A stretch of 61,929 nt of DNA, the filler included, from Platydemus manokwari (taxonomy: Eukaryota), in assembly GCA_037951405.1 (NCBI GenBank). It is 5 parts of 5 records of this genome, joined end to end, with 100 filler letters (N's around TTAATTAATTAA, not from the genome) between each part and the next. Parts side by side here need not be neighbours in the genome. Positions count along the whole stretch, not along the records: positions 49,080 to 61,929 come from JBBMOY011942493.1; 4 more parts are not named here. The stretch is one strand, 5' to 3'. The notes under the pieces were generated by a model, which did not search any database, was not told the origin of the DNA, and saw only the letters and a program-made list of their open reading frames with translations. A program made the position numbers and the translations under genes. Below are positions 2,561 through 61,929 of the stretch, piece after piece (position 1 is the stretch's first letter; the number at the start of each line of letters is the position of its first letter).

Positions 2561-5012
2561 ACCGCTTTGTGAGGAATATTTAAAGGAACAAATTTAATCA
2601 TAATTTCAATAATTTAAAAATAATTTTAGAATGAAATTTGTAATATTTTAGAAATTTAAATTATAATATAAAAAAATGTTATGAAGTGATTTTTAAATAA
2701 TTTAAATATTTTTATTTAGAGATATATTAATATTTTAATTTCTTTAAAAATGCTTAATTTGTTTTAAATAATAAAAATTACGAAAATCGTCCAAATAAAT
2801 ACTTCTAACGAATCTCCAACTTCAAACGAGATAGCTACCTCTAACAATCTCCTTTAATTGTATGATTAATTTTCATTTGCAGTTCTTAGAGTAATTATAT
2901 TCAATGAAGTGAATATTTTGTAATTTGATGATCATCCTTATTTATTTTATTGATTTTATTACCATATGTATTGATTAATTTAATGAATCGATCAAATTGA
3001 TTTACCTTCGATAAAGTTATTAATCTAACGCAATATTCAATAAAATAAATTTATGATCTGATAAGACTTTAAAACATAAAATATAATTAATGATAAATGG
3101 AAAAAATATTAAAACCGTTAAAAAATAAAATAAAATAATCTAAATAAAGTTTGTTTAAAAAGCAAGGGTCTTTATTTAGACCTGAAAAGAACAGAAAAGA
3201 GACTTTATATAATATACATTGAGTAATTAAAATAACAAAAACAAAAAAAATTAACTTGTGTTTACAAAAATAAACAAGAAAAAGCGGAACATAAAAGAGA
3301 AACTAAATAGAAAAACTAAAATACAAAATGTAATATTGGATATAAAGTAATATTGGATATAAATCAAAAGCAGCAAACTGTTACGATCATTACTAAAACT
3401 GAATTCCTAAAATTATAATTTTAAAGTAACAACTCATCGAAATTCAATAATAGCACTGAGAAATCGTTAATGCGAATTACTAAGAAAACCAAATGTCAAA
3501 TCACAATGATTTTAGTATTCGAATGATAAACTTAATGACAGAAATTATCGATCATAGAAGATTGATGATTGTCTTCGAGATTTGACTCATTTTACAAACC
3601 TGTTGCTTAGCTTTGTTGTTTGATGCTTTGATTTTCTTTCTTTAAAACCGTTGGAAGACTAGGATGTTAATAAATTTCATTCTAACTATTATGTGATGTT
3701 CGTTGACATTCGTTGGTGTGTGGCAATTGACAATCGAAATGTAGTCGAAGATAGATAATTCGATGGCATATGATTGGCTACTGGCACGTATTATTTACTT
3801 GTTAGGTATATCACAGCAGTTGAGCTGTTCTAATAGCAGAACTCCGTAGTTATTACATTAAATTTTGCATATGATTTCTTCAACGTTGAAGTTATTTATA
3901 TAAACAACATATACTGTGATAAATGCCTTATTGTTATCTTAAATTTAAATTCTGTTTATATCCTACTTTTATTACATCGGAAACTTCAATTTAGTATGTG
4001 TACGACAAATCTGACTTTTTAGGGATTGTATTTAATACTACTTCCCAAAGTATTAATCAAATTAAAATTTAAATGTATCCAAAATAACTCGAAGAGAAAA
4101 ATAACAATAAAACTCCAATAATTCCTTCGATCTTAAGCCTGGCTTGTATTCTTGAACTTTTAACAAACACCCAATTTCTAAAACTAATCAATTAGATGGC
4201 AATTCAGCAAAGAAGGCATGAATTGATTCTAGATTTAGTATTTCTGTTTATTTCAGAAGTCATTATCAATCCTATTTAATCACAAAATATTAAATATCGA
4301 TCCATTCAAGTAAATTAAATTATCTCTAATGCTTTCACATAACTTCTTTATAATAAAAATGTATAATATAATTTTATAATTTCAAAACTACAGTTCAAAT
4401 TAGTCTGTCACTAACATCAATCGTAACTTTTTATAAAATCCCTTTTTTGTCAAATACGAAAGGATTACTAAAAATCAAGATTATTAAATATCAATACTTC
4501 ATGTAGTTGTTGAGAACAATAACTTTTCCACATCCTTAATAACATGAAAAATGATTCTAAAAAATTACAGAAAAATAGAAATAAGAATGTTTTATGAGGA
4601 AATATTCAATTATAATTGCTATCTAGAATCAAAAACACATCACATAAATAAATCCCATTCTCAAATGATGTAAGAAAGAAAATAATACATCTGTGATATT
4701 TAGAGGACAAAATAATTAACAGAAAGAATAAATTTAGAATAAAGAAAATCCATGTTACTCCAAAATTAATCTAAAACCAATTTAAACCTCACGAAAATTC
4801 AAGCAATAAAAACTTAATAAAAAAATTATCAAAGAAAAATTATTCGAAATTAAAAAAGCTAACAAACTATATTTTTATTTCATTTAAAAATCAAACAGCA
4901 ATGCAGCTAAAAATGAACATTAAATAAACGCGATTATCTGTGATGAATGCTTTATTAGAAATACATATTTATATATAGATAAATATAAATGCAATAGGAC
5001 ATTGTTCTTCAA

Positions 5013-49079: not shown

Positions 49080-49517
49080 ATAACTCCTTTATTTATCAAT
49101 GCAAGAACAATGAAAAATTCCCATTAAATAAATTATTCTATTAAATAAAAATTTTTCACCTTTTTTTCAATTTGAGTTGAGATGTATACATGAAAAGCCA
49201 ATTTAAAAAATACCGCTAACTACCTGATTGATAAATTGAACATTTTGAATCTTTCAAATTTTAATTAATTTTTATAATTGAATGTTATCTAGCAATAGAA
49301 TTGGCCTAGAAATGAACCATGAATTTATAAAATTCAAGTATTAAGAATTAGTTGAAAGCCTCATTTTACTTTTAATTATCGAGATATCTTTATAATCTTT
49401 TGTCTTATACTTATTTTTTACAAGTTCCTTAATAATCAAAATCGGTATTAAAATTGCAAAAATTCCAGATAACAAAATTAATTTATGAAATAATTAGAAA
49501 AAACAAATATCTCAGTT

Positions 49518-50607
49518 TCAATCGGTGAGATATTCTCCGCCACAATCCATCACTTCCTTCCACCGTTATGGCGGTTTGTCAATCTCACGTTTGAAATAGA
49601 TTGGTGATTTTTGGTCGGAAAATTCTTCAATCCACGTTGTTATTACTTTTTCGTTTTCAAATGTGATCCCAGAAAGATGGTTCGACATGAATCGGAATAG
49701 ATGAAAACCTGTTGGGGCTAAGCCTGGCGAGTATAGATGGTGTGGAAAAATTTCCCAGTCAGGCTCTTTAATAGCCAACTTTGTTATTATGACGACATGA
49801 GGCCAAGCATTGACACAATAAAATTCGGCATTGATTGTTTGGTTTTTTGGCAAGATTTTGTAATGAATAACACCAACTTGGTCTCACCAAACGCGCAACA
49901 GTGTTTCGCGTTGATGAACTTAGGTTTTCGGATGTGGTTGTGATTGCTTTTGAGGACTTACCCAAACTTTTTGTGTTTCAAATTTAAATACAGACACCAG
50001 TTCTCATCACTTGATACGATTCTGGAAAGGAAAGATTGATGTTGTTGCACAGTGAACGAGTAGTAATGCGGAAATTGAAACACTTTGATTTTTGCGACCC
50101 ATGCTGGAAGCTTTTGAACTTTTGCCATTTTCTTGAAATGTCTAGAAATAGTGGTGCAATCACAATCAATGGCTTATCCAAGCGCTTGTGGCGATTGACG
50201 CGGATCATCATGAATCAATTGGTTCAAACAGTCTTCATCAAAGTCACTAGGTCGGCCTGACCGAGTTGCATCGTTTAAGTCAAAATTTCCACTGTTAAAT
50301 TTCGAAAATCACTGTTGTGCTGTTTGTTCACTGACTGCCTTTTCTCTACAAACGCAGCAAATCATTCTGGTGCGTTCTGCAGCGTTTAAATGTTGATTAA
50401 AATAGAAAAGAAGTAGATGGCGGAAATGTTCATTTGTATCTCCCTGACACTCCATTTTAATGAGGGTAATAAAAGTGAAAGTTAGTCTAAAATGATTAAA
50501 ATCGATAACTCAGCTGAATGAATGTAACTGAAATCAGTAAAAACACGAAGTTGATGTGTTTTCTTTGCAACAAATAAAACTGTACGAATTTATGCACCAA
50601 CCCAATA
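49518..50607 (-). mobile_element. Defective mariner (Tc1/mariner, cecropia-like) DNA transposon
   Basis: TA plus TIR TTGGGTTGGTGCATAAATTCGTACAGTTTT at 50607-50576. ATG at 50455. HFRHLLLFYF, FNSGNFDLND..RSGRP, IVSSDENW, NQTINAEFYC, HHLYSPGLAPTGFHLF, RWKEVMDCGGEY. Contains stops and frameshifts. The second TIR was not found. Confidence 0.93.
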
Positions 50608-50941
50608 GTTAAATCAATATATGTCTAATTTTCACGACTATTACTAACAATATCATCATATATTATATAATTAATCTTGACTTTATTGTACCCTTTGCTT
50701 TGATTCAAGTAAAATAAAATTTATAGCGAAATATTTTTTTTTCAATTAACACAAAATAAACTTTTTTGACCATTATAATTAATTAAAGGAGTACGCAATT
50801 TATCATTCCTGATAACACCTGATAAAATCATAACTTCAGTGACAAATATAAAAGTTTTATAATATTATTTTTTTGTTTATACTACTAGGCATACCTGGAC
50901 TATTTGAACAATTAGTAAGGTGAAATTCTCAAAGTTGCCAT

Positions 50942-51653
50942 TGTTAGAATTATCAACTTATGCTAAATACCAAATTAATAATTTAAGATCACAATCGCTT
51001 ACAAAACCGAATCGTCAATAATCACAGTTCAAAATCACACTCAATAATCAATGAATAATCATCACAAGGCGGGATCATCATCTGAAAATTAAACATCGAC
51101 ATAGAAAGCTATTAAAACTGGTTGGTAGAAAATCAAGTAAAAGACTCACATAATGAAAATGATCAACTAAAAAGACTGCCAAATGCTCGTGAGATGCAAC
51201 TCCTTTTGAATGCTTATCATGTGTGTTCACTTGATGACTCAAGGACTTATTCTTACTTCACACGTCGGTCTGTTAGCAAATTTTCTTATATCTCTTGTTT
51301 TATATCTAGCGTATTTTGATGTTTGATGCCTGTTCTTGATATACACCATTTGATTATCGAGTTCTAGATGTGAATTGATATACAGGAAAAATTGATTGGC
51401 TATTTCCATAAGCGTTGTCGAATCTGTGCGAATCAACTTTGAGGGTTATTTTCATGATTTACGTGGATATTTTGCTTGTTTTTAAGATCTATCAAACATG
51501 ATTGTAAAGTAAATCTACAACACTCAAAATCTTAAATCAAACTTATTTAGAAAAGCAAAAGTTCCAAGAGTCAAATTTCAAAACACAATTGGCTCACCTC
51601 AAAAAGATAAAAAAAAAATAGCCACAAAAATTACTAATCACTGAAGTCTGACA
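50942..51653 (+). mobile_element. Solo LTR-like repeat, family B
   Basis: TGTTAGA...TCTGACA inverted TG..CA termini. Internal similarity to 58510-59100. Confidence 0.55.
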
Positions 51654-54018
51654 GTCTTGAAGCTTTGTTTTTCATTTGTTCGAATTGTCTGAAGACCAGC
51701 CAATTGACGAATTTCCTTCTATATTGCAAGATATTGGTATTCCTGAATGTTCATTATCTGTTGTTACTGTGCATCTATTTTCAATCGAAATACATCTCGT
51801 GTTTGATAATTCGAAGGCATATTATTGGAACGTGTGTTTATCTTTCCTGTGTGTAGTAACCTTTTGAAGGTTACTCCGATGGTTTCGATAATTATTCTTC
51901 ACCTTTTATCACATACTTCACATATCCCCCTTATCCCATAAGACTTTTTCACAAAATCTTAGGTTTCTTGTCGCTATCCATGTTACTTTCGATACCAATT
52001 GAAACGATTCAAAGAATGTAAAGTTTTTGGCTTGCACATATTATCACCAATATAATAAACAGCAATAAATTATAATAATAATAATAATCTAAATATTAAT
52101 AATAACACTAATAATGATAAAAATAATATCAGCGACATCGTGTGCAGAAACAATAATGATAACCATAATAATCACGGGGATAATAGAATTGCAATAGAAA
52201 GTATAAACAGCAATATGACTAATATCGCAATGATGTTTATAATAAAATAATAAACCTGATGATAATTAATAATTGTAGAGTTGAAAAAAAGGTTTGCCCT
52301 GCTAATATTAGTAATTAAATTATATTAATAATAAATTTATTAATTAAATAAAAATAATTTTTCATTTTTTTGGTTATCTGTTAAGAGAAAGAATGGTTTA
52401 TGGCTTTTGGCAACTGATTGTCGGATCAAAGCTCCACCACCCACCTGCATTTCCGCAATTCATATTTAATACTCGATTCTGGCAACTGCGAAGCTTATTA
52501 AAGTAGTGGGAGATGCCCATTTCTTTATCGAAATTAAATAATAAATATCTTTGTTGGATAACCCAATTGGTTGGCCATTCAGATTTGAGTTAAATGGTTT
52601 TATTTTTTTCTCGTTCCTCACTTATTTTTTATGCATGTTTTCCAGCTTTCCACTAGCTCAAAGTTATGTATCTGTCGTGGATTCTTAGCGCATTTAATTT
52701 AATTTTTTTAGGAGAATGACCATTGAAATCCTCATTGATTACCTGTGTCTTTTTTCATCTTCCGTGCATTTCAGTTGAAATAATATTGTAGTTAGTGCAA
52801 TATGAATTTGTACTTTGTTTTTCACTTCTATCAGCATCACAACTTTACTCACTTGATAGGACCAGGTCCATCGATTTGGATCATATTTCTCATTATCTTT
52901 TAATTTCATCTCATAATATGATATTAATGACAAATATTTTGTATATGACCGAAGATTTTTAAATGTTACATGTGTAATTTTGTAAATTGGCTGTGTTGTA
53001 TCATGCCCGTCTTTTTGGCCTAGTTTTATCTTGACTCTTATTTTTCGTGCCAAATGTGAAATGTTTGTAAGAAGTCACATCATTTGAACTCATAAAATGG
53101 GTCTTATCAAAATGCTATCTTTCAAATGAATAGACTATATTAAGATAAATTTCCGATTCGAGCTTTATTCGTGTAATCGTCCAATATGAATGCATGAGAA
53201 ATACTCTGATGTTTTTAACCAAATTCGATCTGAGCCAGATTTGTTATGTTTATAAATCCTAATGAATTTGGTGTGGAACAAACGCTTAAACATTCTACTA
53301 GTTCTATTTCTGTCCTTGGGTGTATCATAATAGTATAAACCTGTTTAATTCACAGCATCATTAAATTCAATACAAAATTAAAATAATTATTTAATGGTGC
53401 AGTCGAAAAAGAAATTAGGAATGAACAAGAAAATGATAAATAAAATAGCTCTTTCTTGCATAAAGTCTAATATAAATGCGAGCTATCTACTATGGAGGTT
53501 CCACGTGGGAAAGAGAACAAATACAGTCTTAAAAATAATTGAAGAGGATATCCAAGATAACATCGACTGGATAGCGGAGACAGAATCGATTGAAATGTTG
53601 AATCGATCGTACGATTGAACTAGCTAACTGTGATTCATGGATCGATCGAAAGAAATAACTATTTACATCCCATATTTTGATGTATGGGTATCTCGAATAT
53701 TAAGGTTTATGAATAAATATTAGTAGTAGTATTAGTATTGAAAATTTTGTTTATCTTTAATGAAATTAACTCCCAATCATTTATTAATGGTATTTATTGA
53801 TTAAATTTTTTCTGAAAAATACTGAAACTTATTTATTTTTATTCTTTTATTTTATCCCCTTTTTAAAAATAGGCATTTTGTTTTGGAATTTAAGTAGTAA
53901 TATGTTAAAATAAACGACACAATGTCTTACGTAAAAAATTTTAAAATAAAGTAAAATTTATTATTCTAAAAATAAGTCATTTTAATTGATAAAATATTTC
54001 TTTTTTATTGTCAATAAT

Positions 54019-54855
54019 TTATATGCCACCTTTCACTCTAGATTCTTCCTCTTTATAAATTCTTTTATAGTGATTATAAACGTATTCATCATCTATGTCT
54101 TTTTCACAAATCATATTATATGCTAACCCTTGATGTATTATATTCATGAAAAATGAATTGAAATGATATAAGATTCCCATTCCACAGAGGCCTTTATAAT
54201 GTTTACGGTATACATGTGAAAAAAATGGGATAATATTTTTATATGTTGGTGCCATTGCATCCATATAGTCTGATGGGAATTCTTCTTCTATTCCTGGCAT
54301 AAGGTTAGAATCAGTACGAATAATTAATAAATGCTCAATATATTTTTCAATATACTCTGGATACGTATCGATTGCATTACAACCTTCCGGATCATGAGAA
54401 GTATGATACCATTCTTTGTCAAATATGCAATGATTTTTTCTATCATGAATTTGATCTTTCAATTCCTTTGGTAAAGGATTAGCTGGTGGCACTCCGTAGT
54501 ACTTCACAGATCTTGCTTTATTAAGGCGACATTCTGAGCTGCTATCCAGGCAGAAATACATTAATATATTCCAATAATTTATTAAGCGGTCATACAAATG
54601 AAACATGGTATATGCAATCCATTCATTGTGAGAAGAGTCATTTGGTGCTATTGCAAAATAACGTGTTCTTATTCCTATTCTTAATGTGTCTGGCATTGGA
54701 CCCTCTTCATCTTCGAGTTCTGCTATATCTTTATGTTGGATATGTTCTGCCTGCATGAATTGTAAACGTGATCGTTTTATAGGTGAATCATAATCTTGCC
54801 CTTCTGGGAGACTTAAATTAGACCCAGGAATTTGACGATTTTTTCTGCAGGCCAT
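54019..54855 (-). CDS. Divergent intronless MOB1/phocein-family (Mob kinase activator-like) protein, 278 aa
   Basis: APNDSSHNEWIAYTMFHLYDRLINYWNILMYFC aligns with MOB1 [39 protein letters not shown] resembles APKYID. FPSDYM...SHVYRKH resembles FPKNFM...AHIYHQH. HFNSFF resembles HLNTSF. Intact ATG-TAA ORF with AATAAA just after the stop. Confidence 0.82.
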   Translation of the reverse strand: MACRKNRQIPGSNLSLPEGQDYDSPIKRSRLQFMQAEHIQHKDIAELEDEEGPMPDTLRIGIRTRYFAIAPNDSSHNEWIAYTMFHLYDRLINYWNILMYFCLDSSSECRLNKARSVKYYGVPPANPLPKELKDQIHDRKNHCIFDKEWYHTSHDPEGCNAIDTYPEYIEKYIEHLLIIRTDSNLMPGIEEEFPSDYMDAMAPTYKNIIPFFSHVYRKHYKGLCGMGILYHFNSFFMNIIHQGLAYNMICEKDIDDEYVYNHYKRIYKEEESRVKGGI

Positions 54856-55126
54856 ACTTATACAATGTTGCTTAACTCAATCGATTATTTAAAATTTAAA
54901 ATAATTTAAAGATCAAAAATATTTTCTCGCGGATTAATGGTTAATTCAAACCACAGAATTGTATTTTAACTTCAGGTTATTAATTATTTAAAACCAATTA
55001 TTTTAATTGAATTTATTTTAATAGGTTTTTATATTACTATAAATGAATTCTATGATTTACCAAATCTAGATAAATTTAATTGATTAAAATTTTAGTTTAA
55101 GGTATTAAAAACGTCCTTTAATTCCA

Positions 55127-55940
55127 TCACAAAAATTTATTAAAATTTTGAAAAATTACATTGTTCAAAATATTCAAACAAACTGAAATGCTTTGTGACA
55201 TATTTGGCCAGAAGTAAATATTTTGAATGTAATCGTCCAATTTCTTATTACCGATATGGCATAATTCCTCATGAAGGCATCTCGTTAATTTTTGCGAATG
55301 AACCTCTGGCACAACAATTCACTTCTTTCCATTCTCGTTGTACACCACTATATTCGTACACACCAAACAATTCGTATTTCTCTAAACTGTTAAAATATTT
55401 AATTTTCTTGACCGATGAATTGACTCCTATTTCCGTTTTCTGTAACCATTTATAAATAGAACCAACGACACTATCTTTTTGTCAAATCTTCCTCATTTCG
55501 TCATTATTCGCAATGGAATGCTCGACAATATTAACAAAACCAATTTTTGGTTTACCTTCTTTAGCCCCTTGGTGCTGAGTTAAACACTATGAAAGCAATG
55601 CTTCACCTAACCTTGAAAGTCCAACCACATTTCCATGACCTCATTCCTTCCGATCTTGAAGTTCGAAATTTAATCCGGATAAGTTTGTAAACCATGTTTG
55701 TTAGTTTTCTTCATGTATGTCAAGGCCTTGTGATCAATGCTAATCACAAATTTCTTTCCCAACAGATAATGCTTAAAATGCATTGTAAACTCGTGAATTG
55801 CCAAAAGCTTCTTCCTCCTGATGCAATAACCTTTTTCATTACTATTAAGAGTTCTAGAAGCATAGGCTACTCTCTCTCTTTTTCAGTGCCATCCAACTGG
55901 GTTAGAACGGCACCAATCGCTCCGAAACTAGCGTCGTCAA
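55127..55940 (-). mobile_element. Degenerate Gypsy pol fragment (RNase H and integrase zinc-binding start)
   Basis: DASFGAIGAVLTQ, DHKAL, HGNVVGLSR, LHEELCHIG...YFWPNM. The HQGAKEGKPK segment is homologous to HHGAKKEKPK in the 24.3 kb element. Confidence 0.88.
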
Positions 55941-55944
55941 TATT

Positions 55945-58420
55945 CAAAACGAGCTCCGCGCAAATTTCAGAAAAATTCAAACCAGATACCAAGACAACTC
56001 AAATCTAAAGGTTATCAATCTCACTGAGATTAAGCACACCTTAAAAAAACTGGAAAACTCGGTACCTGAAAACGATTGGATCACTTACAAAGACTAGAGA
56101 TTAATCGATCCCCAGCAAATCTTCCTCCAATCAATGTTCAACAGAATTCTCAAGAACAAAACAATACCGGATCAGTCGAAAGAATGCAACACAAATCTTC
56201 TCCTGCAACCTGGGAAATAATCAACATCCCACAAGATCACATCCTGGCGTCCCATTGCTCTCAATGACTCGTCTTACCGAATCTTCACTACAATACTAAA
56301 CCTAAGGTCACTGAAATGGATAGATGCTGGAAACTTACTGTCATCAAACCAAACAGCAACGCTCGCATCAGAGAGATGCGCAGAGCACAATGCATATCTA
56401 TTCTCACTGCAAGAATACTGCACAACAACAAACTATATCTCTGCTGGGCTGACCTCAAAGAAGCCTTCCAAAGCTTACCACACGAGGTCATCTGGTTTAC
56501 GCTTAAAAAAATGAGTTTCAGTATTCTTTACATTGAGATGATCAAGGCCATATACCAGGACTCCAAATCAACTTATACTTGTGGAATGCTCAAGACACCA
56601 CCAATTCCAATCTACCGGGAAGTAAAACAAGGATGCCTTCTGTCAATGACACTCTTCTGCCTGTCAATTGATTTCCTCATGTACCTCTCACAATATATGA
56701 CACTCAATTCTCAACACTGGCCAACACTGACGATGTCATTATCATAGCAAATTCTGGAGAGAACTTGGATAACCGGCTAAATCAACTTATTAATCACACA
56801 ACGGATATTATAAACACAATAAACATCTCCAAATGTGGCTACTTCTGCAAAAAATAATAAGAATCGAATCGATCTAACAGTATTCGGAGAATCCGTGCCA
56901 ATCTTGGATAGTGACAATATCTACAAATATCTCGGAGTGCTCTTCAGTCTACCCAAGCGATTACCGGTCGACCACATCCTGGAATCAATCATCACAGACT
57001 TTGAAGCTATCGCAGACTGTATGTTAAACAAAAATTCCAAGCTTACAATATTTTTTTGCACTCGAAATTGCCTTTCCACCTTCGAATCCAACAAGTAGAA
57101 ACTACCAAACTGGATTCAAGAAGACGGATCTCATATCAAAATTAATCAGTACAATCATTTGACAATAAAAATGCGTCAAATATCTCGTAAAATTCTAAAA
57201 ATGGACTGTTGAAACTCAACCAACAACAACTTCTTCTATATACCTACCACACTTGGCCGGATTGGACTCACCAGGTCCCTCGTGGAATATTGCATATAGA
57301 ACATTGTCGATGTCTTCCGCTATCTCACAATCCCGGACCAAGAATTTAGAACATTTACGTCAAACCACATAACCAATATTGTGAAGCACCGAATGACTGA
57401 ATCAAATGATCTCGTAACAGCACTTCTCCGGATCTCTGACAAACTACCAACTGAAAAAGCATCCTCTGCAGTAATATGGTGGACCAATACTAACTATGCA
57501 GTCAGAAAACTTAGGAAGAGCCAAATCGATGTAGAATTCTACAACCCCCACACTGAAAGTTTCCTAAAACTCCCGTTGGACAACAACAAGACTTACCATT
57601 TCAACTTCGACAATCGTGGTAAACTCTCAGACATTCTATATCAGTATCAATGCATTACTACAACGAGTGGGTACTATGAAAAAAAAGGAAGACTGGTTCA
57701 CCGCTTCTCGACCAGTCATCTCTCGCAAAAACCTGTGAAAAACTTCCACTTGTCGCCAGAGGTCCGGATTTTAACCTATCAGGCCAGTAAAAACCTACTA
57801 TTACTGAATTACACACCGTATTTCATGAAGAAAGGGAAATTAACCTTATGCCGACGACGCGAGACAGAACAGGAAACTGATGCCCACATATTCATCCATT
57901 GTCCATCAGTCCCTGGTCTGACATCAAAAAGACACTCAATCGTTTTGGACCACCTAGACAACTACTTACAATCACTCGGACTGGATACCGATATTGATAC
58001 AAGCCCACCGGAACTAAATACAAGATTGCAACCGGATCTGATCATCGGGAACAAAACCAAGAGACATGCCTACATCATAGGCCTGAAGATCCCATATGAT
58101 ATCTCTGATAACTTTAAGAAACACTGGTTCTTGAACTTTGAAAAATATTGGACAATAGCGGCTAAAATCAAAACAAAAACCAAATATGAAACGTCACTGG
58201 ATGTACTCTGTATTGGAGTACTTGGATCTTGGGATCCGAAAAACAACAAAGTGCTTTCCAACATCGGTCTAGACAAGCCACATATCACCCCCTTCCTCTG
58301 TACTGTTGCACTCAATTTTGTTATTTTAGCAATCAAATGACAAGATCATGAAATTTTTAGCTATATTCTTGCATATCCCTACCTTTTACTGATCATCGTG
58401 TGTCAAACCTGCGTCTATAG
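55945..58420 (+). mobile_element. 5'-truncated degenerate non-LTR retrotransposon with restriction-like endonuclease (R2 group; NeSL/R5/Utopia-like)
   Basis: RT motifs WRPIAL, WADLKEAFQSLPH, VKQGCLLSMTLF, NTDD (for YADD), YKYLGV. Zinc knuckle CRR..ET.AHI..HC, then RH, RLQPDL, KIPYD, EKY and IGVLGSWDPKN (RLE domain). Confidence 0.9.
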
Positions 58421-58509
58421 AGTTTAAAATCGAGATATTTGCAACGCGGTGCAGAACAAACAACAGCTCCTGTGGTATGATCGCTTATCCACATTTGATA
58501 GAGCTACTG

Positions 58510-59100
58510 GGTTATCAATCAACACTTTAGATCTGAAAATTGTATTAACCAAAATATTACGATCAAATTTTCAATAACAACAGAAGAATCTTTTCGCAAC
58601 TCACAAAGTAAATCACTTAAGACGGAATCAGCGCTCTAAAGTGAAAAACAGAATAGAAAGTAATCAAAAAGACTACTTACTAAAAATCACACAAAGATAA
58701 GCTTACCACTCAAGTTACCAACCAAAAAGACTGGCAGATATTCATGGAACTCAACATCTTTTATAAATCTATCGGGTGTACCTGATTAATGTCATAGATT
58801 TTCGTTTTTCATTTGCTGAATTTGTTCGTGTATTGATCTACCCAGCATCTCTCATGCTATTGGCAGATATTTAAGCTTGTTGCCATTTGTATGTATATGC
58901 CCGTTGACTCTTATCTTCTAAATATGAATTAATATTAGAATGAATCTGATTGGTTAACGGCACGTGTGTTTATTAGGTCTGTGTGTATTGACCCTTTTTA
59001 GGATTCTTTCTTTGATTTCTATGACCCTTTTGATTGATTTGTAATCTACCAAACAGAAATTTCCTGAGTTTGGCCTTGTCTGCAGACTGTACTACGAACA
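58510..59100 (+). mobile_element. Solo LTR-like repeat, family B
   Basis: A-rich then T-rich halves as in 50942-51653, a shared aaaagactg.ca.at block, and an end at ...GAACA. Confidence 0.45.
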
Positions 59101-59209
59101 TTTGTCGTCTCAATTTTAATTTTATAAAATACAGACATTTTCAAATAGGTAAAAGATATTTTTTTTAATTCATTAGGAATCTGTAATATGGAAAAATGAA
59201 AATATTAAA

Positions 59210-59460
59210 TAAAATAGCTATCGATCTAGCAAAAAATAAAGATACAGTCACTCACATAAAATCATATCGAACCATTGACGATAAGCTTATTAGGAAAAAA
59301 TTGCTGGCCTATGGTAAAATATCAACTGACGCTGAAAACTGAAAATTGTAGTTATAAATCATAACAGATTTCAAAGCCCGAATTATCAATAAATACAGTC
59401 GAAACAACTCTAAATTTACAAGAAATAATCACCTATGGTGGTATCAGCAATCGAAAGTCA
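59210..59460 (+). mobile_element. Short LINE reverse transcriptase relic
   Basis: IAIDLAKNKDTVTH...KLLAYG resembles DLSKAFDTV.H..LL.KL..YG. Confidence 0.45.
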
Positions 59461-60290
59461 AACGGTAAAATAGAAGGCAAACTGGTCATCTAAAATATTA
59501 CGTTTAGTCTCACAAAATAAAATTACCGACTCAAGAGACTTGTAATTGCTCGTGATAGGCTATCACGTGTGTACACTTGATTTTTCAGAGCTTCAATTTT
59601 CATTCGTCAGGATATTTTACATCTCGGTCTGTTAGGAAATTTTATTGTATCTCTCATGCCATTGACGAATTTCTATGTTTGTTTCCAGTAATTGGTATGT
59701 GCGAGTTGATTATTGAATTCTAAATATAGATTGAAATATAGGAATAATATGATTGACTATATGCAAGTACGGTTATTGAATCAGTGTTTATCAACTTATT
59801 TAAGGGTTTCTTCAATGGTTTCCATAAATATTTTTGTGTTTTTTAAGATTCATTTAACAACTATTTGAATAATTTCGGATTTAGAATTGTAATTGATAGT
59901 ATTAATATTTTTTTGTAACATCTGTAAATTTTGCTACAGATTTTTAACAAAATTATTAAAACTGTATTAAGGATCATCATGAGTATTTTATTGCAAATAT
60001 AAAAATTTCAGTAAGCAAATGGTGTCGCGCCTTTTATATTAACATATAAATTTGCTTATTTACCGAATTAGCACTAATTACATATTTTACATTTTCTAAT
60101 TTATTTGTATAATAAAAATTTAGAAATTTAAAATTATTTATAGTTTAATTAGAACATTTTAGTTGCTTAAAACATCTATTAACAATAATTGTAACTTCAT
60201 TGTTTTAATAATATTAACAAATATAAGCTTGTGTACAATTATTATCCGTAATTCTTATTTTAATTATGTGTTTAGGTGTTTTGATGTGTT

Positions 60291-60833
60291 ATGAATAGAG
60301 GCCGTGCTGAACCTGGAAGCGTAGAAAGGTACAAATATTTAGAAGAAATTGTTACAGAATTAAACAGTTCTGAATCACTTGAAATCAAAGATCAGATAAT
60401 TGCTAATTTAGCTAATTTTGCATACGATTGCAGAAATCATCACCATTTATTCCAATTAGGCATATTAGACATATTCTTTACAAATATAAAGTTATTTTAT
60501 AATCAGAAATTAGGTACAGATAGATACTTAAACAGAATCCATTTAAATTCTGTAATAGGAATCTGCAATCTTTCTGCTAATACAGATTATCATAAAGCTA
60601 TTTGTAATCACGATAAATTCTGGTTGATAATCAAAGGTCTTTCTTCTGATAATTTAGAAATTGTTGTAACCGTTGTTACAACATTTATTTACCTCTGTGA
60701 TAGTGAAGTTGGGAAGAAAAGTGTTATAATTTCAGGAATTATAAGCACTTGTCAAAAATTGTCAATAACCACTAATTGCAGATTGAAAAACGTAGTAACG
60801 ATATTTTTGGAAGACTATGTTTCGAAGCCCTAA
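60291..60833 (+). CDS. ARMC7: Armadillo repeat-containing protein 7, intronless CDS, 180 aa
   Basis: RYKYLEEIVTEL...KDQIIANLANFAYD.RN...L.QL.ILDIF, GICNL and C-terminal RLKNVVTIFLEDY match ARMC7 family motifs (YLQ.LVTEF, EQVLANLANFAYDP, RL.NLA.IFL.D). Confidence 0.92.
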   Translation: MNRGRAEPGSVERYKYLEEIVTELNSSESLEIKDQIIANLANFAYDCRNHHHLFQLGILDIFFTNIKLFYNQKLGTDRYLNRIHLNSVIGICNLSANTDYHKAICNHDKFWLIIKGLSSDNLEIVVTVVTTFIYLCDSEVGKKSVIISGIISTCQKLSITTNCRLKNVVTIFLEDYVSKP

Positions 60834-61399
60834 ATTTTTCAAAATAGCAACCCTAAATATTGTTAGAAACTTATCAGTTCCTAAAGTCTCTCCGATTCCT
60901 TCAAATTATCTGAAATCTGGATACATTAATTTCATTCGATTCGAAGCAGGTGATGAATTATGTATCGTTCGACCACAAAATTTGAAATCCGTACCTATTA
61001 AACCAGAATTATTGGAATATATACACAAGGATAATTGTTCTTATCAATCTATTAATAAATCTTCGATAACCGAAACTAGTAGTCAAACCATGGAAGATTA
61101 CACTTTTGAGAATTCTCGTAAGGTTTTTATGAAATACTATGAGGAAATTCTGAAATTAATTTTCAGATGCTAATAATTTATCAGTGTTGGATTCAATGTC
61201 TCACATATTAAAACCTTTAACAGTCAAACAACGATTTGAGGTGTATGGCAAGTTAGGGAAACTGCGATTAACAACTTTAGTAGTGATTAGTTCATTATCT
61301 GGCTTCGTTATGGCACCTTTACCAATAGAATGGAGTACAATTTTTCTTGCTAGTATTGGGACATTCTGCACCAGTATGGCAGCGAATACTATCAATCAG
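60817..61399 (+). CDS. COX10: Protoheme IX farnesyltransferase (heme O synthase), first two exons; gene continues beyond the window
   Basis: Exon 60817-61117 begins with a basic, acid-free presequence-like segment (MFRSPKFFKIATLNIVRNLSVPK). A 49-nt GTAAGG..TTTCAG intron (61118-61166) joins in frame to exon 61167-61399, YGKLGKLRLTTLVVISSLSGFVMAP...GTFCTSMAANTINQ then gt, the COX10/UbiA N-terminal motif. Confidence 0.88.
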
Positions 61400-61929
61400 G
61401 TACGGGATTATCATCATTAAATAAACCTTGTATTTAATGGCTTTGTATTTTGACATTTTATTTTATTTATTTTTGGTGATTTCAGCTTATCAATCATGGG
61501 ATTGTCTGAATTATAATTTGACCCAAAATAATAATAAATTATTATTCTCGAAATTTTAATTATATATTTATATTTTTGAATAATAATAATAATAATTGTA
61601 GAATATATCTTACATGATTTATGATGAATTTAATTCTCATTTTAATTCTCATCAATAATAAAAATAATAATAATAATAATCAATTTTGAATTGTAATTTG
61701 GAACATCTTGGACATCGAATACGTATTTCTTTTGCATTTGAATTGCATTTTGAATGAATTAAAATACTCATCACTGAATTCTGATTAATATATAATAATT
61801 ATTATTATTTGTGATTATATATCAAACCGATTTAATATTTTGTCAATATTAATGATTTCAGGATTCACATTTTGTTATTTATATATTATTATTGTTATTG
61901 TTTATCTGTATAAATTGATGGCTTTATCA

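What the first reader, a model, noticed from the sequence alone, without database searches (positions are those of the whole stretch)
54019..54855. Intact, intronless, highly divergent MOB-family gene lacking most of the phosphopeptide-binding pocket
Seen: a clean 278-aa ORF among decayed repeats, about 270 nt from a Gypsy pol relic, with no introns although the larger neighbouring genes are intron-rich. Ungapped alignment to human MOB1 from memory (FPKNFMSVAKTILKRLFRVYAHIYHQH versus FPSDYMDAMAPTYKNIIPFFSHVYRKH) keeps the zinc-ligand His pair and the K153 equivalent, but R154 becomes N and R157 becomes P. Those basic residues bind phosphorylated MST/Hippo. The Cys pair (FCLDSSSEC) and a T35-like site (DTLRIG, resembling ATLGSG) are retained, and there is an insertion of about 30 aa. 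Inference: a retrocopy or TE-captured MOB that may act as a Hippo-uncoupled or dominant-negative NDR/LATS adaptor. MOB proteins are normally very conserved, so this degree of divergence is unusual.
Basis: partly seen in the sequence, partly recalled or inferred. Interest (0 to 1): 0.72.

Follow-up and report, generated by a model that had tools for sequence, protein, structure and literature searches.

The report
Divergent single-copy MOB adaptor gene
This is a real, intact, single-copy gene for a very unusual member of the MOB family of kinase-adaptor proteins; it keeps the MOB fold but has lost most of the residues that tie ordinary MOB1 to the Hippo growth-control kinases, and it has almost no known relatives.

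Summary
A 278-aa ORF lies on the minus strand at 54019-54855. It is far longer than chance allows and shows a coding-type GC pattern across codon positions. It passes Pfam's Mob1_phocein threshold (47 bits, cutoff 27). An AlphaFold model superposes on MOB1 at Z 17.9, rmsd 2.5 A over 166 residues.

The protein is not an ordinary MOB1 or MOB4 orthologue. Among 1.84 billion representative proteins only one is close: P0001, 35% identical over the full length and carrying the same insertion. All other hits have E 2e-8 or worse. A second divergent group (P0015, P0027, P0042) joins it in a tree with 96/95 support. The combined clade sits with Mob2-type proteins, with moderate support (87/89).

TE capture is not supported. 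In the one public run that holds the locus, the ORF lies on one unique contig between highly repeated flanks. A retrocopy origin is neither shown nor excluded, and no poly-A tract or target-site duplication is visible. Expression and binding partners could not be tested. Mob2-type proteins also lack the phosphopeptide pocket, so that loss is not unique.

The parts
54019..54855 (-). Complete single-exon CDS (278 codons plus TAA) of the divergent MOB-fold protein
   Evidence: ORF listing. Pfam Mob1_phocein at 47.1 bits. ORF length and codon-position GC against shuffles. Full-length 35% match to P0001.
54706..54855 (-). N-terminal tail, residues 1-50, predicted mostly disordered. It contains a DY-x-SP-[IV]-KR-x-R motif shared with P0001 and P0023, which could be a CDK-type site or a nuclear localisation signal (inference only).
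   Evidence: pLDDT 39-51. Motif conserved in the pairwise alignment and in A2. P0001 and P0023 show no differences in their first 93 residues.
54673..54702 (-). GPMPDTLRIG motif, residues 52-61. T57 aligns to the MST1/2 phospho-site T35 of MOB1.
   Evidence: HMMER domain 1 alignment to MOB1A. Identical in P0001 and P0023; the position is His in the P0015 group.
54529..54672 (-). N-terminal part of the MOB core, residues 62-109. It includes the NEWIA motif (E78 and W79 correspond to E55 and W56), the long helix H2 (76-103) and the C102/C109 pair. This is the best-conserved stretch within the clade.
   Evidence: pLDDT 78-91. 55-56% identity to P0001 over residues 51-104. W79 and C102 are invariant in A1.
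54433..54528 (-). Clade-specific insertion between the Cys loop and the beta-hairpin, roughly residues 110-141. Its first half (R-x-N-x-x-RS-x-x-YYG-x-PP) is conserved with P0001.
   Evidence: Gap against all ordinary MOBs in A1. 43% identity to P0001 over residues 105-127. Low model confidence, pLDDT 42-63.
54022..54432 (-). C-terminal part of the MOB core, residues 142-278: beta-hairpin, helices 165-181, 197-226, 229-245 and 257-277, zinc-ligand His pair H214/H219, and degenerate phosphopeptide pocket K206/N207/P210.
   Evidence: pLDDT 85-95 for residues 170-270. VIA-align Z 17.9 to 5xqz_A. HMMER alignment. H214, Y216, H219 and N233 are invariant.
54004..54009 (-). AATAAA hexamer, starting 10 nt past the last base of the stop codon (9 nt lie between). 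Candidate polyadenylation signal by inference only, in very AT-rich DNA.
   Evidence: Read directly from the sequence.
55127..55312 (-). Short relic of an LTR-retrotransposon integrase zinc-binding domain, 272 nt upstream of the MOB start codon. It lies within highly repeated DNA and is not part of the gene.
   Evidence: Pfam Integrase_H2C2 at E 5e-6. Depth 751 to 64,851 in the bins that cover it, 55005-55338.
53335..53835 (.). Repeated DNA bordering the 3' side of the gene
   Evidence: Summed contig depth about 2,900-3,500, against about 12 over the ORF.
55005..56006 (.). Very highly repeated DNA bordering the 5' side of the gene
   Evidence: Summed contig depth 751 to 76,810, with many variant contigs and joints.

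Best explanation
The ORF is a functional, single-copy, single-exon gene for a highly divergent MOB-fold adaptor protein. It belongs to a small, poorly sampled clade made of this protein, P0001/P0023, and more distantly P0015/P0027/P0042. That clade branches on the Mob2 side of the MOB1/Mob2 split.

**Shown:** the MOB fold, the retained His pair and first Cys, a conserved clade-specific insertion, strongest conservation on the N-terminal strand and helix H2, and loss of the MOB1 residues that dock phosphorylated MST/Hippo kinases.

**Inferred:** like other MOBs it has no enzymatic activity and acts by binding a partner. The partner is most likely the N-terminal regulatory region of an NDR/LATS-type kinase, bound through the H1/H2 face. 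Binding would not involve recruitment by phospho-MST, so any activation would be independent of Hippo-kinase docking, as in Mob2-type proteins. Changes at the E51 and D63 positions make LATS-type binding less likely than NDR/Tricornered-type binding, and a different partner is possible.
For: **Gene is real**
- The ORF is 278 aa; the longest ORF in shuffles was 154 aa. Codon-position GC is coding-like.

**Family and fold**
- Pfam match of 47 bits against a cutoff of 27.
- AF2 core pLDDT is about 90.
- Foldseek gives probability 1.0 and TM 0.75-0.79 to MOB1.
- VIA-align gives Z 17.9 to MOB1, 16.9 to Mob2 and 13.7 to MOB4. The next unrelated fold scores Z 6.0.

**Constraint**
- P0001 is 35% identical from end to end, with only 7 gap positions and the same insertion.
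- Identity is uneven: 55% over residues 51-104 against 14-31% in most other segments (43% in the first half of the insertion and 47% in helix 228-246).
- P0001 and P0023 differ at 28 sites, none of them in residues 1-93. By my own arithmetic on those numbers, the chance of that under a uniform spread is about 7e-6.

**Single copy**
- One exact contig covers the ORF, at the same depth as unique DNA.

**Placement**
- The trio has 100/99 support. The six-member clade has 96/95. The clade plus Mob2-type sequences against 14 MOB1-like sequences has 87/89.
- The clade profile scores yeast Mob2 at 70 bits, above MOB1A at 58 bits. MOB4 is absent at E<=10.

**Residue roles** are taken from PMC6627106.
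Against: - There is no expression evidence. The only public run found holds the locus as DNA-like contigs.
- No DNA of relatives was available, so dN/dS was not computed.
- No partner was tested.
- Subfamily affinity is ambiguous. The single sequence scores MOB1A above Mob2 (31 against 25 bits), and so does P0042 (44 against 36 bits).
- The tree has no MOB3 or MOB4 references. It has long branches, so the 96/95 grouping with the P0015 group could be long-branch attraction.
- The second zinc Cys is not conserved in the closest relatives: it is K or N in P0001/P0023 and T in the P0015 group.
- E51 and D63, which are important for NDR/LATS binding in MOB1, are S74 and H86 here.
Confidence: 0.6

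Rival explanations
1. It is simply the fast-evolving Mob2 orthologue of this lineage and not an extra, lineage-specific paralogue. The missing phosphopeptide pocket and the changed E51 position would then be ancestral Mob2 traits.
For: - The clade sits with Mob2-type sequences in the tree, with 87/89 support.
- The clade profile scores best against yeast Mob2.
- Mob2-type sequences P0003, P0008 and P0010 also lack R154, R157 or both. P0003 was confirmed as Mob2-type at 245 against 169 bits.
- Vitulo et al. 2007 (PMC2684140) note that the Mob2 class is the least homogeneous.
Against: - Identity to any Mob2-type sequence is only about 17-21%. The best non-clade hit has E 2.4e-8 and is an amoebozoan MOB1-like protein.
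- The single sequences score MOB1 slightly above Mob2.
- The 31-residue insertion and the altered H2 motif are absent from all Mob2-type sequences seen.
Confidence: 0.22
2. It is a processed retrocopy that is drifting neutrally or only recently became non-functional. The intact ORF would then be luck or youth.
For: - The CDS is intronless, compact and surrounded by transposon debris.
- No expression data were found.
Against: - An 834-nt ORF in 32% GC DNA is far beyond chance.
- It cannot be young. No parent-like MOB lies closer than about 25% identity, and a 35%-identical relative keeps the same architecture with an open frame.
- Conservation is strongly patterned.
- No poly-A tract or target-site duplication is present.
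Confidence: 0.06
3. It is a host MOB gene captured and carried by a transposable element (a Gypsy-type or other repeat).
For: - An integrase zinc-finger relic lies 272 nt upstream on the same strand.
- Repeats abut both sides.
Against: - The ORF and about 150-180 nt on each side are unique DNA on a single exact contig. No other contig of the run matches it at 80% likeness or more, whereas the flanks match thousands of contigs.
- The integrase relic is a 61-aa fragment with no continuation on either side of the gene.
- No terminal repeats bracket the gene.
Confidence: 0.03

Closest known systems
MOB1 (human MOB1A/B, Drosophila Mats): Hippo-pathway co-activator of LATS/NDR kinases
   Same: - Same fold: Z 17.9, rmsd 2.5 A over 166 of 178 residues of 5xqz_A.
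- NEWIA motif kept (E55 and W56).
- First zinc Cys and both zinc His kept.
- A Thr aligns to T35, and the K153 equivalent is kept.
   Different: - Only about 17-19% identity.
- R154 is N and R157 is P; the K104/K105 equivalents are G and C.
- E51 is S and D63 is H.
- The Cys loop is CX6C.
- There is a net insertion of about 31 residues before the beta-hairpin.
- The N-terminal tail is longer and unrelated.
Mob2 (yeast Mob2-Cbk1, animal MOB2-NDR)
   Same: - Best score of the clade profile: 70 bits to 5ncm_A.
- Same side of the tree, with 87/89 support.
- Like Mob2-type sequences, it lacks a complete K153/R154/R157 pocket.
- Structural match of Z 16.9.
   Different: - About 20% identity.
- It has the clade-specific insertion and a changed H2 motif (AY-x-x-[YF]H-x-x-DR-x-x-x-x-W in place of A-x-N-x-x-x-F[FY]).
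- Membership of the Mob2 class is not established.
MOB4 / phocein (STRIPAK subunit)
   Same: Same general fold (Z 13.7 to 7k36_H).
   Different: - No sequence match at E<=10, with either the single sequence (E<=1) or the clade profile.
- Foldseek gives only E 1.3.
- hMOB4 keeps the three pocket residues (PMC6627106); this protein does not.
Unclassified divergent Mob-related proteins of nematodes, yeasts and protists noted by Vitulo et al. 2007 (PMC2684140)
   Same: They set a precedent for lineage-restricted MOB-domain proteins that fall outside the named classes.
   Different: None of the 22 HMMER hits other than P0001 is close.

Membership tests
MOB / Mob1_phocein superfamily (PF03637) | Match to the family profile above the curated threshold | tested here: met
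   47.1 bits against a cutoff of 27, E 3.5e-12. All 30 ESM-Atlas feature neighbours are Mob1_phocein clusters.
MOB / Mob1_phocein superfamily (PF03637) | Four-helix-bundle MOB fold with a capping hairpin | tested here: met
   The AF2 model has core pLDDT about 90. Foldseek gives probability 1.0. VIA-align gives Z 17.9, with unrelated folds at Z 6 or below. The model is predicted, not solved.
MOB / Mob1_phocein superfamily (PF03637) | Tetrahedral zinc site (C79, C84, H161, H166 in MOB1) | tested here: inconclusive
   All four ligand positions are occupied here (C102, C109, H214, H219), but with CX6C spacing. The second Cys is missing in P0001/P0023 and in the P0015 group. Zinc-site geometry and metal binding are not testable with these tools.
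MOB / Mob1_phocein superfamily (PF03637) | Binds the N-terminal regulatory region of an NDR/LATS kinase | not testable with these tools
MOB1 subfamily (Hippo co-activator) | Phospho-Ser/Thr pocket K153/R154/R157 plus K104/K105 for MST1/2 docking | tested here: not met
   The positions are K206, N207 and P210. The K104/K105 equivalents are G158 and C159 by the Y168/Y114 offset. In P0001 the three pocket positions are T, N and S. Residue roles come from PMC6627106.
MOB1 subfamily (Hippo co-activator) | High sequence conservation and the acidic NDR/LATS-binding residues E51 and D63 | tested here: not met
   Identity to MOB1 structures is 17-19%. E51 is S74 and D63 is H86.
Mob2 subfamily | Groups with named Mob2 proteins in phylogeny and profile comparison | tested here: inconclusive
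   The tree supports this at 87/89, and the profile scores Mob2 above MOB1. The single sequences score MOB1 above Mob2. No animal Mob2 with a curated name and no MOB3 or MOB4 references were in the tree.
MOB4 / phocein subfamily | Sequence similarity to phocein and a retained basic pocket | tested here: not met
   No PDB phocein hit at E<=10. Foldseek E 1.3. The pocket is not retained.
MOB3 subfamily | Groups with MOB3A-C | not tested
Processed retrogene | Intronless copy with a poly-A remnant and target-site duplications, and an intron-bearing parent | tested here: inconclusive
   The CDS is intronless. No poly-A tract or flanking direct repeats were found.

The most novel reading that the evidence does not exclude
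This protein, with P0001/P0023 and the P0015/P0027/P0042 group, represents a previously unrecognised class of animal MOB-fold proteins. The class would be old enough to have diverged to 22-35% identity within itself. It would be defined by an insertion before the hairpin and a remodelled H1/H2 face, with a degenerate zinc site. It would have lost both the MST-docking and the canonical LATS-binding determinants and now serve a partner other than NDR/LATS kinases.
Probability: 0.2. Interest if true: 0.6.

Novelty: new variant of a known kind. Interest (0 to 1): 0.45.

Why it matters
MOB proteins are among the most conserved signalling adaptors in eukaryotes, and they sit at the centre of Hippo and NDR kinase control of growth and cell shape. 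This gene keeps the fold but rewrites the surfaces that bind the upstream kinase, and partly those that bind the downstream kinase, while staying under constraint. It therefore offers a natural experiment on which MOB surfaces are needed for which partner. It may also mark a lineage-specific rewiring of NDR/LATS signalling. That said, it is a single gene of unknown expression in an unidentified invertebrate-like genome. Mob2-type proteins already show that MOBs can work without the phosphopeptide pocket. The interest is moderate, not high.

Tried and rejected
- **Word-index protein search** with the ORF found nothing. With P0001 it found only P0001 itself. With the clade profile it added only P0042.
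- **Metagenome contig scan** with the clade profile gave 208 pattern matches, none confirmed.
The samples, DNA and gene structures behind P0001, P0023, P0015 and P0042 could not be fetched, and dN/dS could not be computed.
- **The look-up of sequencing runs** with kind rna returned one coded run with no RNA record, so expression is untested. That run was used only to check copy number.
- **Rfam and tRNA scans** of the piece found nothing.
- **Phylum of the organism:** the ESM Atlas look-up of the neighbouring retrotransposon ORF gave only generic arthropod and chordate TE clusters. The organism remains unidentified.
- **Paper searches** for flatworm MOBs and for divergent or retrogene MOBs found nothing relevant. 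One review had none of the residue terms.
- **Complex prediction** was not used, because no NDR/LATS or MST sequence from this organism was available and neighbouring genes give no reason to expect a pair.
- **An unspliced in-frame intron as the source of the insertion** was considered and rejected. The first half of the insertion is conserved at the protein level in P0001.
- **Chance ORF, TE-captured gene and young retrocopy** were considered and rejected. See the rival explanations.

Full report
**1. The observation**

The piece 49080-61929 is AT-rich, at 31.8% GC. On the minus strand an ATG at 54855 opens a 278-codon frame that ends with TAA at 54021-54019. In 300 shuffles of the piece the longest ATG-ORF averaged 82 aa and never exceeded 154 aa. 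GC falls from 0.44 to 0.32 to 0.24 across codon positions, and the unique flanks have 0.18. This is a real coding frame and not a chance ORF.

**2. Family and fold**

- Pfam gives one family, Mob1_phocein, at E 3.5e-12 and 47.1 bits against a cutoff of 27, in two stretches.
- phmmer against PDB sequences finds MOB1A/B (best E 1.6e-6), then yeast Mob2 (1e-4). Phocein does not appear.
- An AlphaFold2 model was built on a 21-row alignment. Mean pLDDT is 70.8 and pTM 0.64. The helices 76-103, 165-181, 197-226, 229-245 and 257-277 have pLDDT about 85-95. Residues 1-58 and 105-160 have low confidence.
- Foldseek returns only MOB structures at the top: probability 1.0 and target-normalised TM 0.75-0.79.
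- VIA-align gives Z 17.9 and rmsd 2.5 A over 166 of 178 residues for MOB1 in the MOB1-NDR2 complex. Yeast Mob2 scores Z 16.9 and MOB4 scores Z 13.7. The first unrelated fold scores Z 6.0.
- All 30 ESM-Atlas feature neighbours are Mob1_phocein clusters.

**3.

The HMMER alignment to MOB1A and the MAFFT alignment A1 reproduce the claims.

| MOB1 residue | Here | Status |
|---|---|---|
| K153 | K206 | kept |
| R154 | N207 | lost |
| R157 | P210 | lost |
| H161 / H166 | H214 / H219 | kept, invariant in all 21 rows |
| C79 | C102 | kept, invariant |
| C84 | C109 | aligned, with two extra residues between the cysteines (CX6C) |
| T35 | T57 (in DTLRIG) | aligned |
| E51 | S74 | lost |
| D63 | H86 | lost |
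| K104 / K105 | G158 / C159 | lost |

The numbering offset to MOB1 rises from +23 at W79 to +54 at Y168, a net insertion of about 31 residues.

The review PMC6627106 gives the roles of these residues:
- K153, R154 and R157 form the phospho-Ser/Thr pocket. They are conserved in hMOB1 and hMOB4; hMOB3 proteins keep only two.
- Glu51 mediates NDR/LATS binding.
- Asp63 gives LATS selectivity.

The determinants of MST docking are therefore largely gone, and two of the known NDR/LATS contact residues are changed. E55 and W56 (the NEWIA motif) are kept.

**4. Relatives**

The word-index search of 5.8 billion clusters found nothing. Because the claim rests on divergence, I ran the exhaustive HMMER search of 1.84 billion representatives.

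- Twenty-two proteins reach E<=0.001, and only one is close. P0001 has 268 aa, E 6.6e-47 and 35% identity, aligned from residue 20 to 275.
- The next hit has E 2.4e-8 and 25% identity. It is an amoebozoan transcript; the rest are scattered fungal, amoebozoan, mollusc and metagenomic MOBs.
- P0001 and its 90%-identical partner P0023 exist only in Logan assemblies of public runs, on contigs of 911 and 928 nt. That is barely longer than the 807-nt CDS.
- The exact protein of the window is not in the 15-billion-protein collection.
- The pairwise alignment has only 7 gap positions. P0001 shares the N-terminal DY-x-SP-[IV]-KR-x-R motif, MPDTLRIG, NEWIAY and MYFCLD. It also shares the first half of the insertion (RS-x-x-YYG-x-PP), a Cys at the end of the insertion, the His pair and HFNS-x-F-x-NI.
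- In P0001 the three pocket positions are T, N and S, and the second zinc Cys is K.

A further pair, P0015/P0027 (225-227 aa), together with P0042 (255 aa, found with the clade profile), shares D-x-L-x-IG and the altered H2 motif. These proteins are only 22-25% identical to the window protein.

**5. Constraint**

Identity between the window protein and P0001 is uneven:
- 55-56% over residues 51-104
- 43% in the first half of the insertion
- 47% in helix 228-246
- 14-31% elsewhere

P0001 and P0023 differ at 28 of 268 positions, all between residues 94 and 268. By my arithmetic a uniform spread would leave the first 93 residues untouched with probability about 7e-6.

Two open frames have been retained across a divergence to 35% identity, with patterned conservation. 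That argues for purifying selection. dN/dS itself could not be computed, because no DNA of relatives was available.

**6. Placement**

I built a maximum-likelihood tree with LG+C20+F+G4 on 24 rows and 220 columns. I left out the fragments P0009, P0018 and P0021 and the redundant cluster members.

- The window protein groups with P0001/P0023 at 100/99 support.
- Those three group with the P0015 group at 96/95.
- The six together with Mob2-type sequences form one side of a branch against 14 MOB1-like sequences, at 87/89.
- The Mob2-type set comprised P0003 (confirmed by 245 against 169 bits to yeast Mob2 and MOB1A), Rhizopus 'mob2' P0008/P0035, and mollusc P0010 (marginal, 136 against 131 bits).
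- Forcing the trio with the Mob2-type rows while excluding the P0015 group is not rejected (AU p 0.10).
- The clade profile scores yeast Mob2 at 70 bits and MOB1A at 58 bits, with no phocein at E<=10.
- The single sequences slightly prefer MOB1.

No MOB3 or MOB4 reference was in the tree, and the branches are long. I conclude that the protein is not MOB1 and not MOB4. It is possibly derived from Mob2, and its class is unresolved. In A1 the Mob2-type rows also lack R154, R157 or both, so the pocket loss alone is not novel.

**7. Genomic setting**

An Integrase_H2C2 fragment of 61 aa lies at 55127-55312 (-), 272 nt upstream of the ATG. An RVT_1 fragment lies at 56316-56747 (+).

I laid the contigs of the only holder run (X1, coded) on 52500-57500 at 80% likeness or more:
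- The ORF bins have summed depth 11.6-12.9, equal to unique DNA at 52500-52666.
- One contig (53630-55135) covers the ORF with no differences.
- Depth is about 2,900-3,500 at 53335-53835.
- Depth is 751 to 76,810 at 55005-56006.
- Depth is 220-730 at 56007-57500.

The tool warns that depth is not a copy number. What it does show is that no second contig resembling the MOB ORF exists in that run, while the flanks are repeated many times. The gene is therefore unique DNA of about 1.2 kb wedged between repeats and is not cargo of a repeat.

No direct repeats bracket it. Only a short A run follows the AATAAA that begins 10 nt past the stop. Retroposition is unproven and, if real, ancient.

**8. 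Mechanism (inference)**

MOBs are non-catalytic adaptors. The conserved face here is the N-terminal strand plus H2. In MOB1 and Mob2 it belongs to the flat H1/H2 surface that carries most conserved residues (Vitulo et al. 2007, PMC2684140), and in solved complexes that surface binds the kinase N-terminal regulatory region.

I therefore rate an NDR-type kinase adaptor that cannot be recruited by phospho-MST as the most likely function (about 0.4 for this specific mechanism). A switched partner is the main alternative. The zinc site may be weakened in the clade.

**9. Limits**

- Expression was not tested, because no RNA run was found.
- The organism is unidentified.
- No complex prediction was run, for lack of a partner sequence.

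**Verdict**

This is a new, strongly divergent variant of a known family. Interest is moderate.

Noticed in passing
window 60291-60833 (+) and 60817-61420 (+): A 180-aa ARM-repeat-like ORF (weak ARM_ARMC5 hit) ends at 60833. An ATG at 60817, 17 nt before that stop, opens a 118-aa ORF. This is followed by a UbiA/COX10-like exon at 61184-61420. A candidate 44-nt GT..AG mini-intron at 61123-61166 does not by itself join the two frames, and a GT donor follows at about 61399. The two genes are therefore nearly abutting or overlapping on the same strand.
   Followed up: partly
window 55172-56006: Extremely repeated DNA. Summed contig depth in run X1 is 12,600 to 76,800, against about 12 for unique DNA, with many variant contigs and internal deletions. 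It includes the integrase H2C2 relic. The repeat family was not identified.
   Followed up: partly
window 56316-58340 (+): Higher-GC block (0.39-0.42) with an RVT_1 fragment at 56316-56747 and an intact 319-aa ORF at 57381-58340 that has no Pfam hit. The nearest ESM-Atlas clusters of that ORF are unnamed or zf-RVT retrotransposon proteins of arthropods and chordates. It is probably the 3' part of a moderately repeated non-LTR retrotransposon (depth 360-730).
   Followed up: partly
window 53335-53835: A repeat with depth about 3,000 directly downstream of the MOB gene. It contains a 74-aa ORF (53394-53618, +) with only sub-threshold Pfam hits.
   Followed up: no
window 49566-49853 (-): A 95-aa ORF whose sequence looks like the C-terminal part of a mariner/Tc1-type transposase (my reading of the translation). 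It had no Pfam hit at E<=0.1.
   Followed up: no
P0015, P0027, P0042 (Logan proteins, no locus): A second group of very divergent MOB-domain proteins (225-255 aa), known only from raw-run assemblies. They lack the second zinc Cys and have V/T-K-Q at the K153/R154/R157 positions. Their organisms are unknown.
   Followed up: partly
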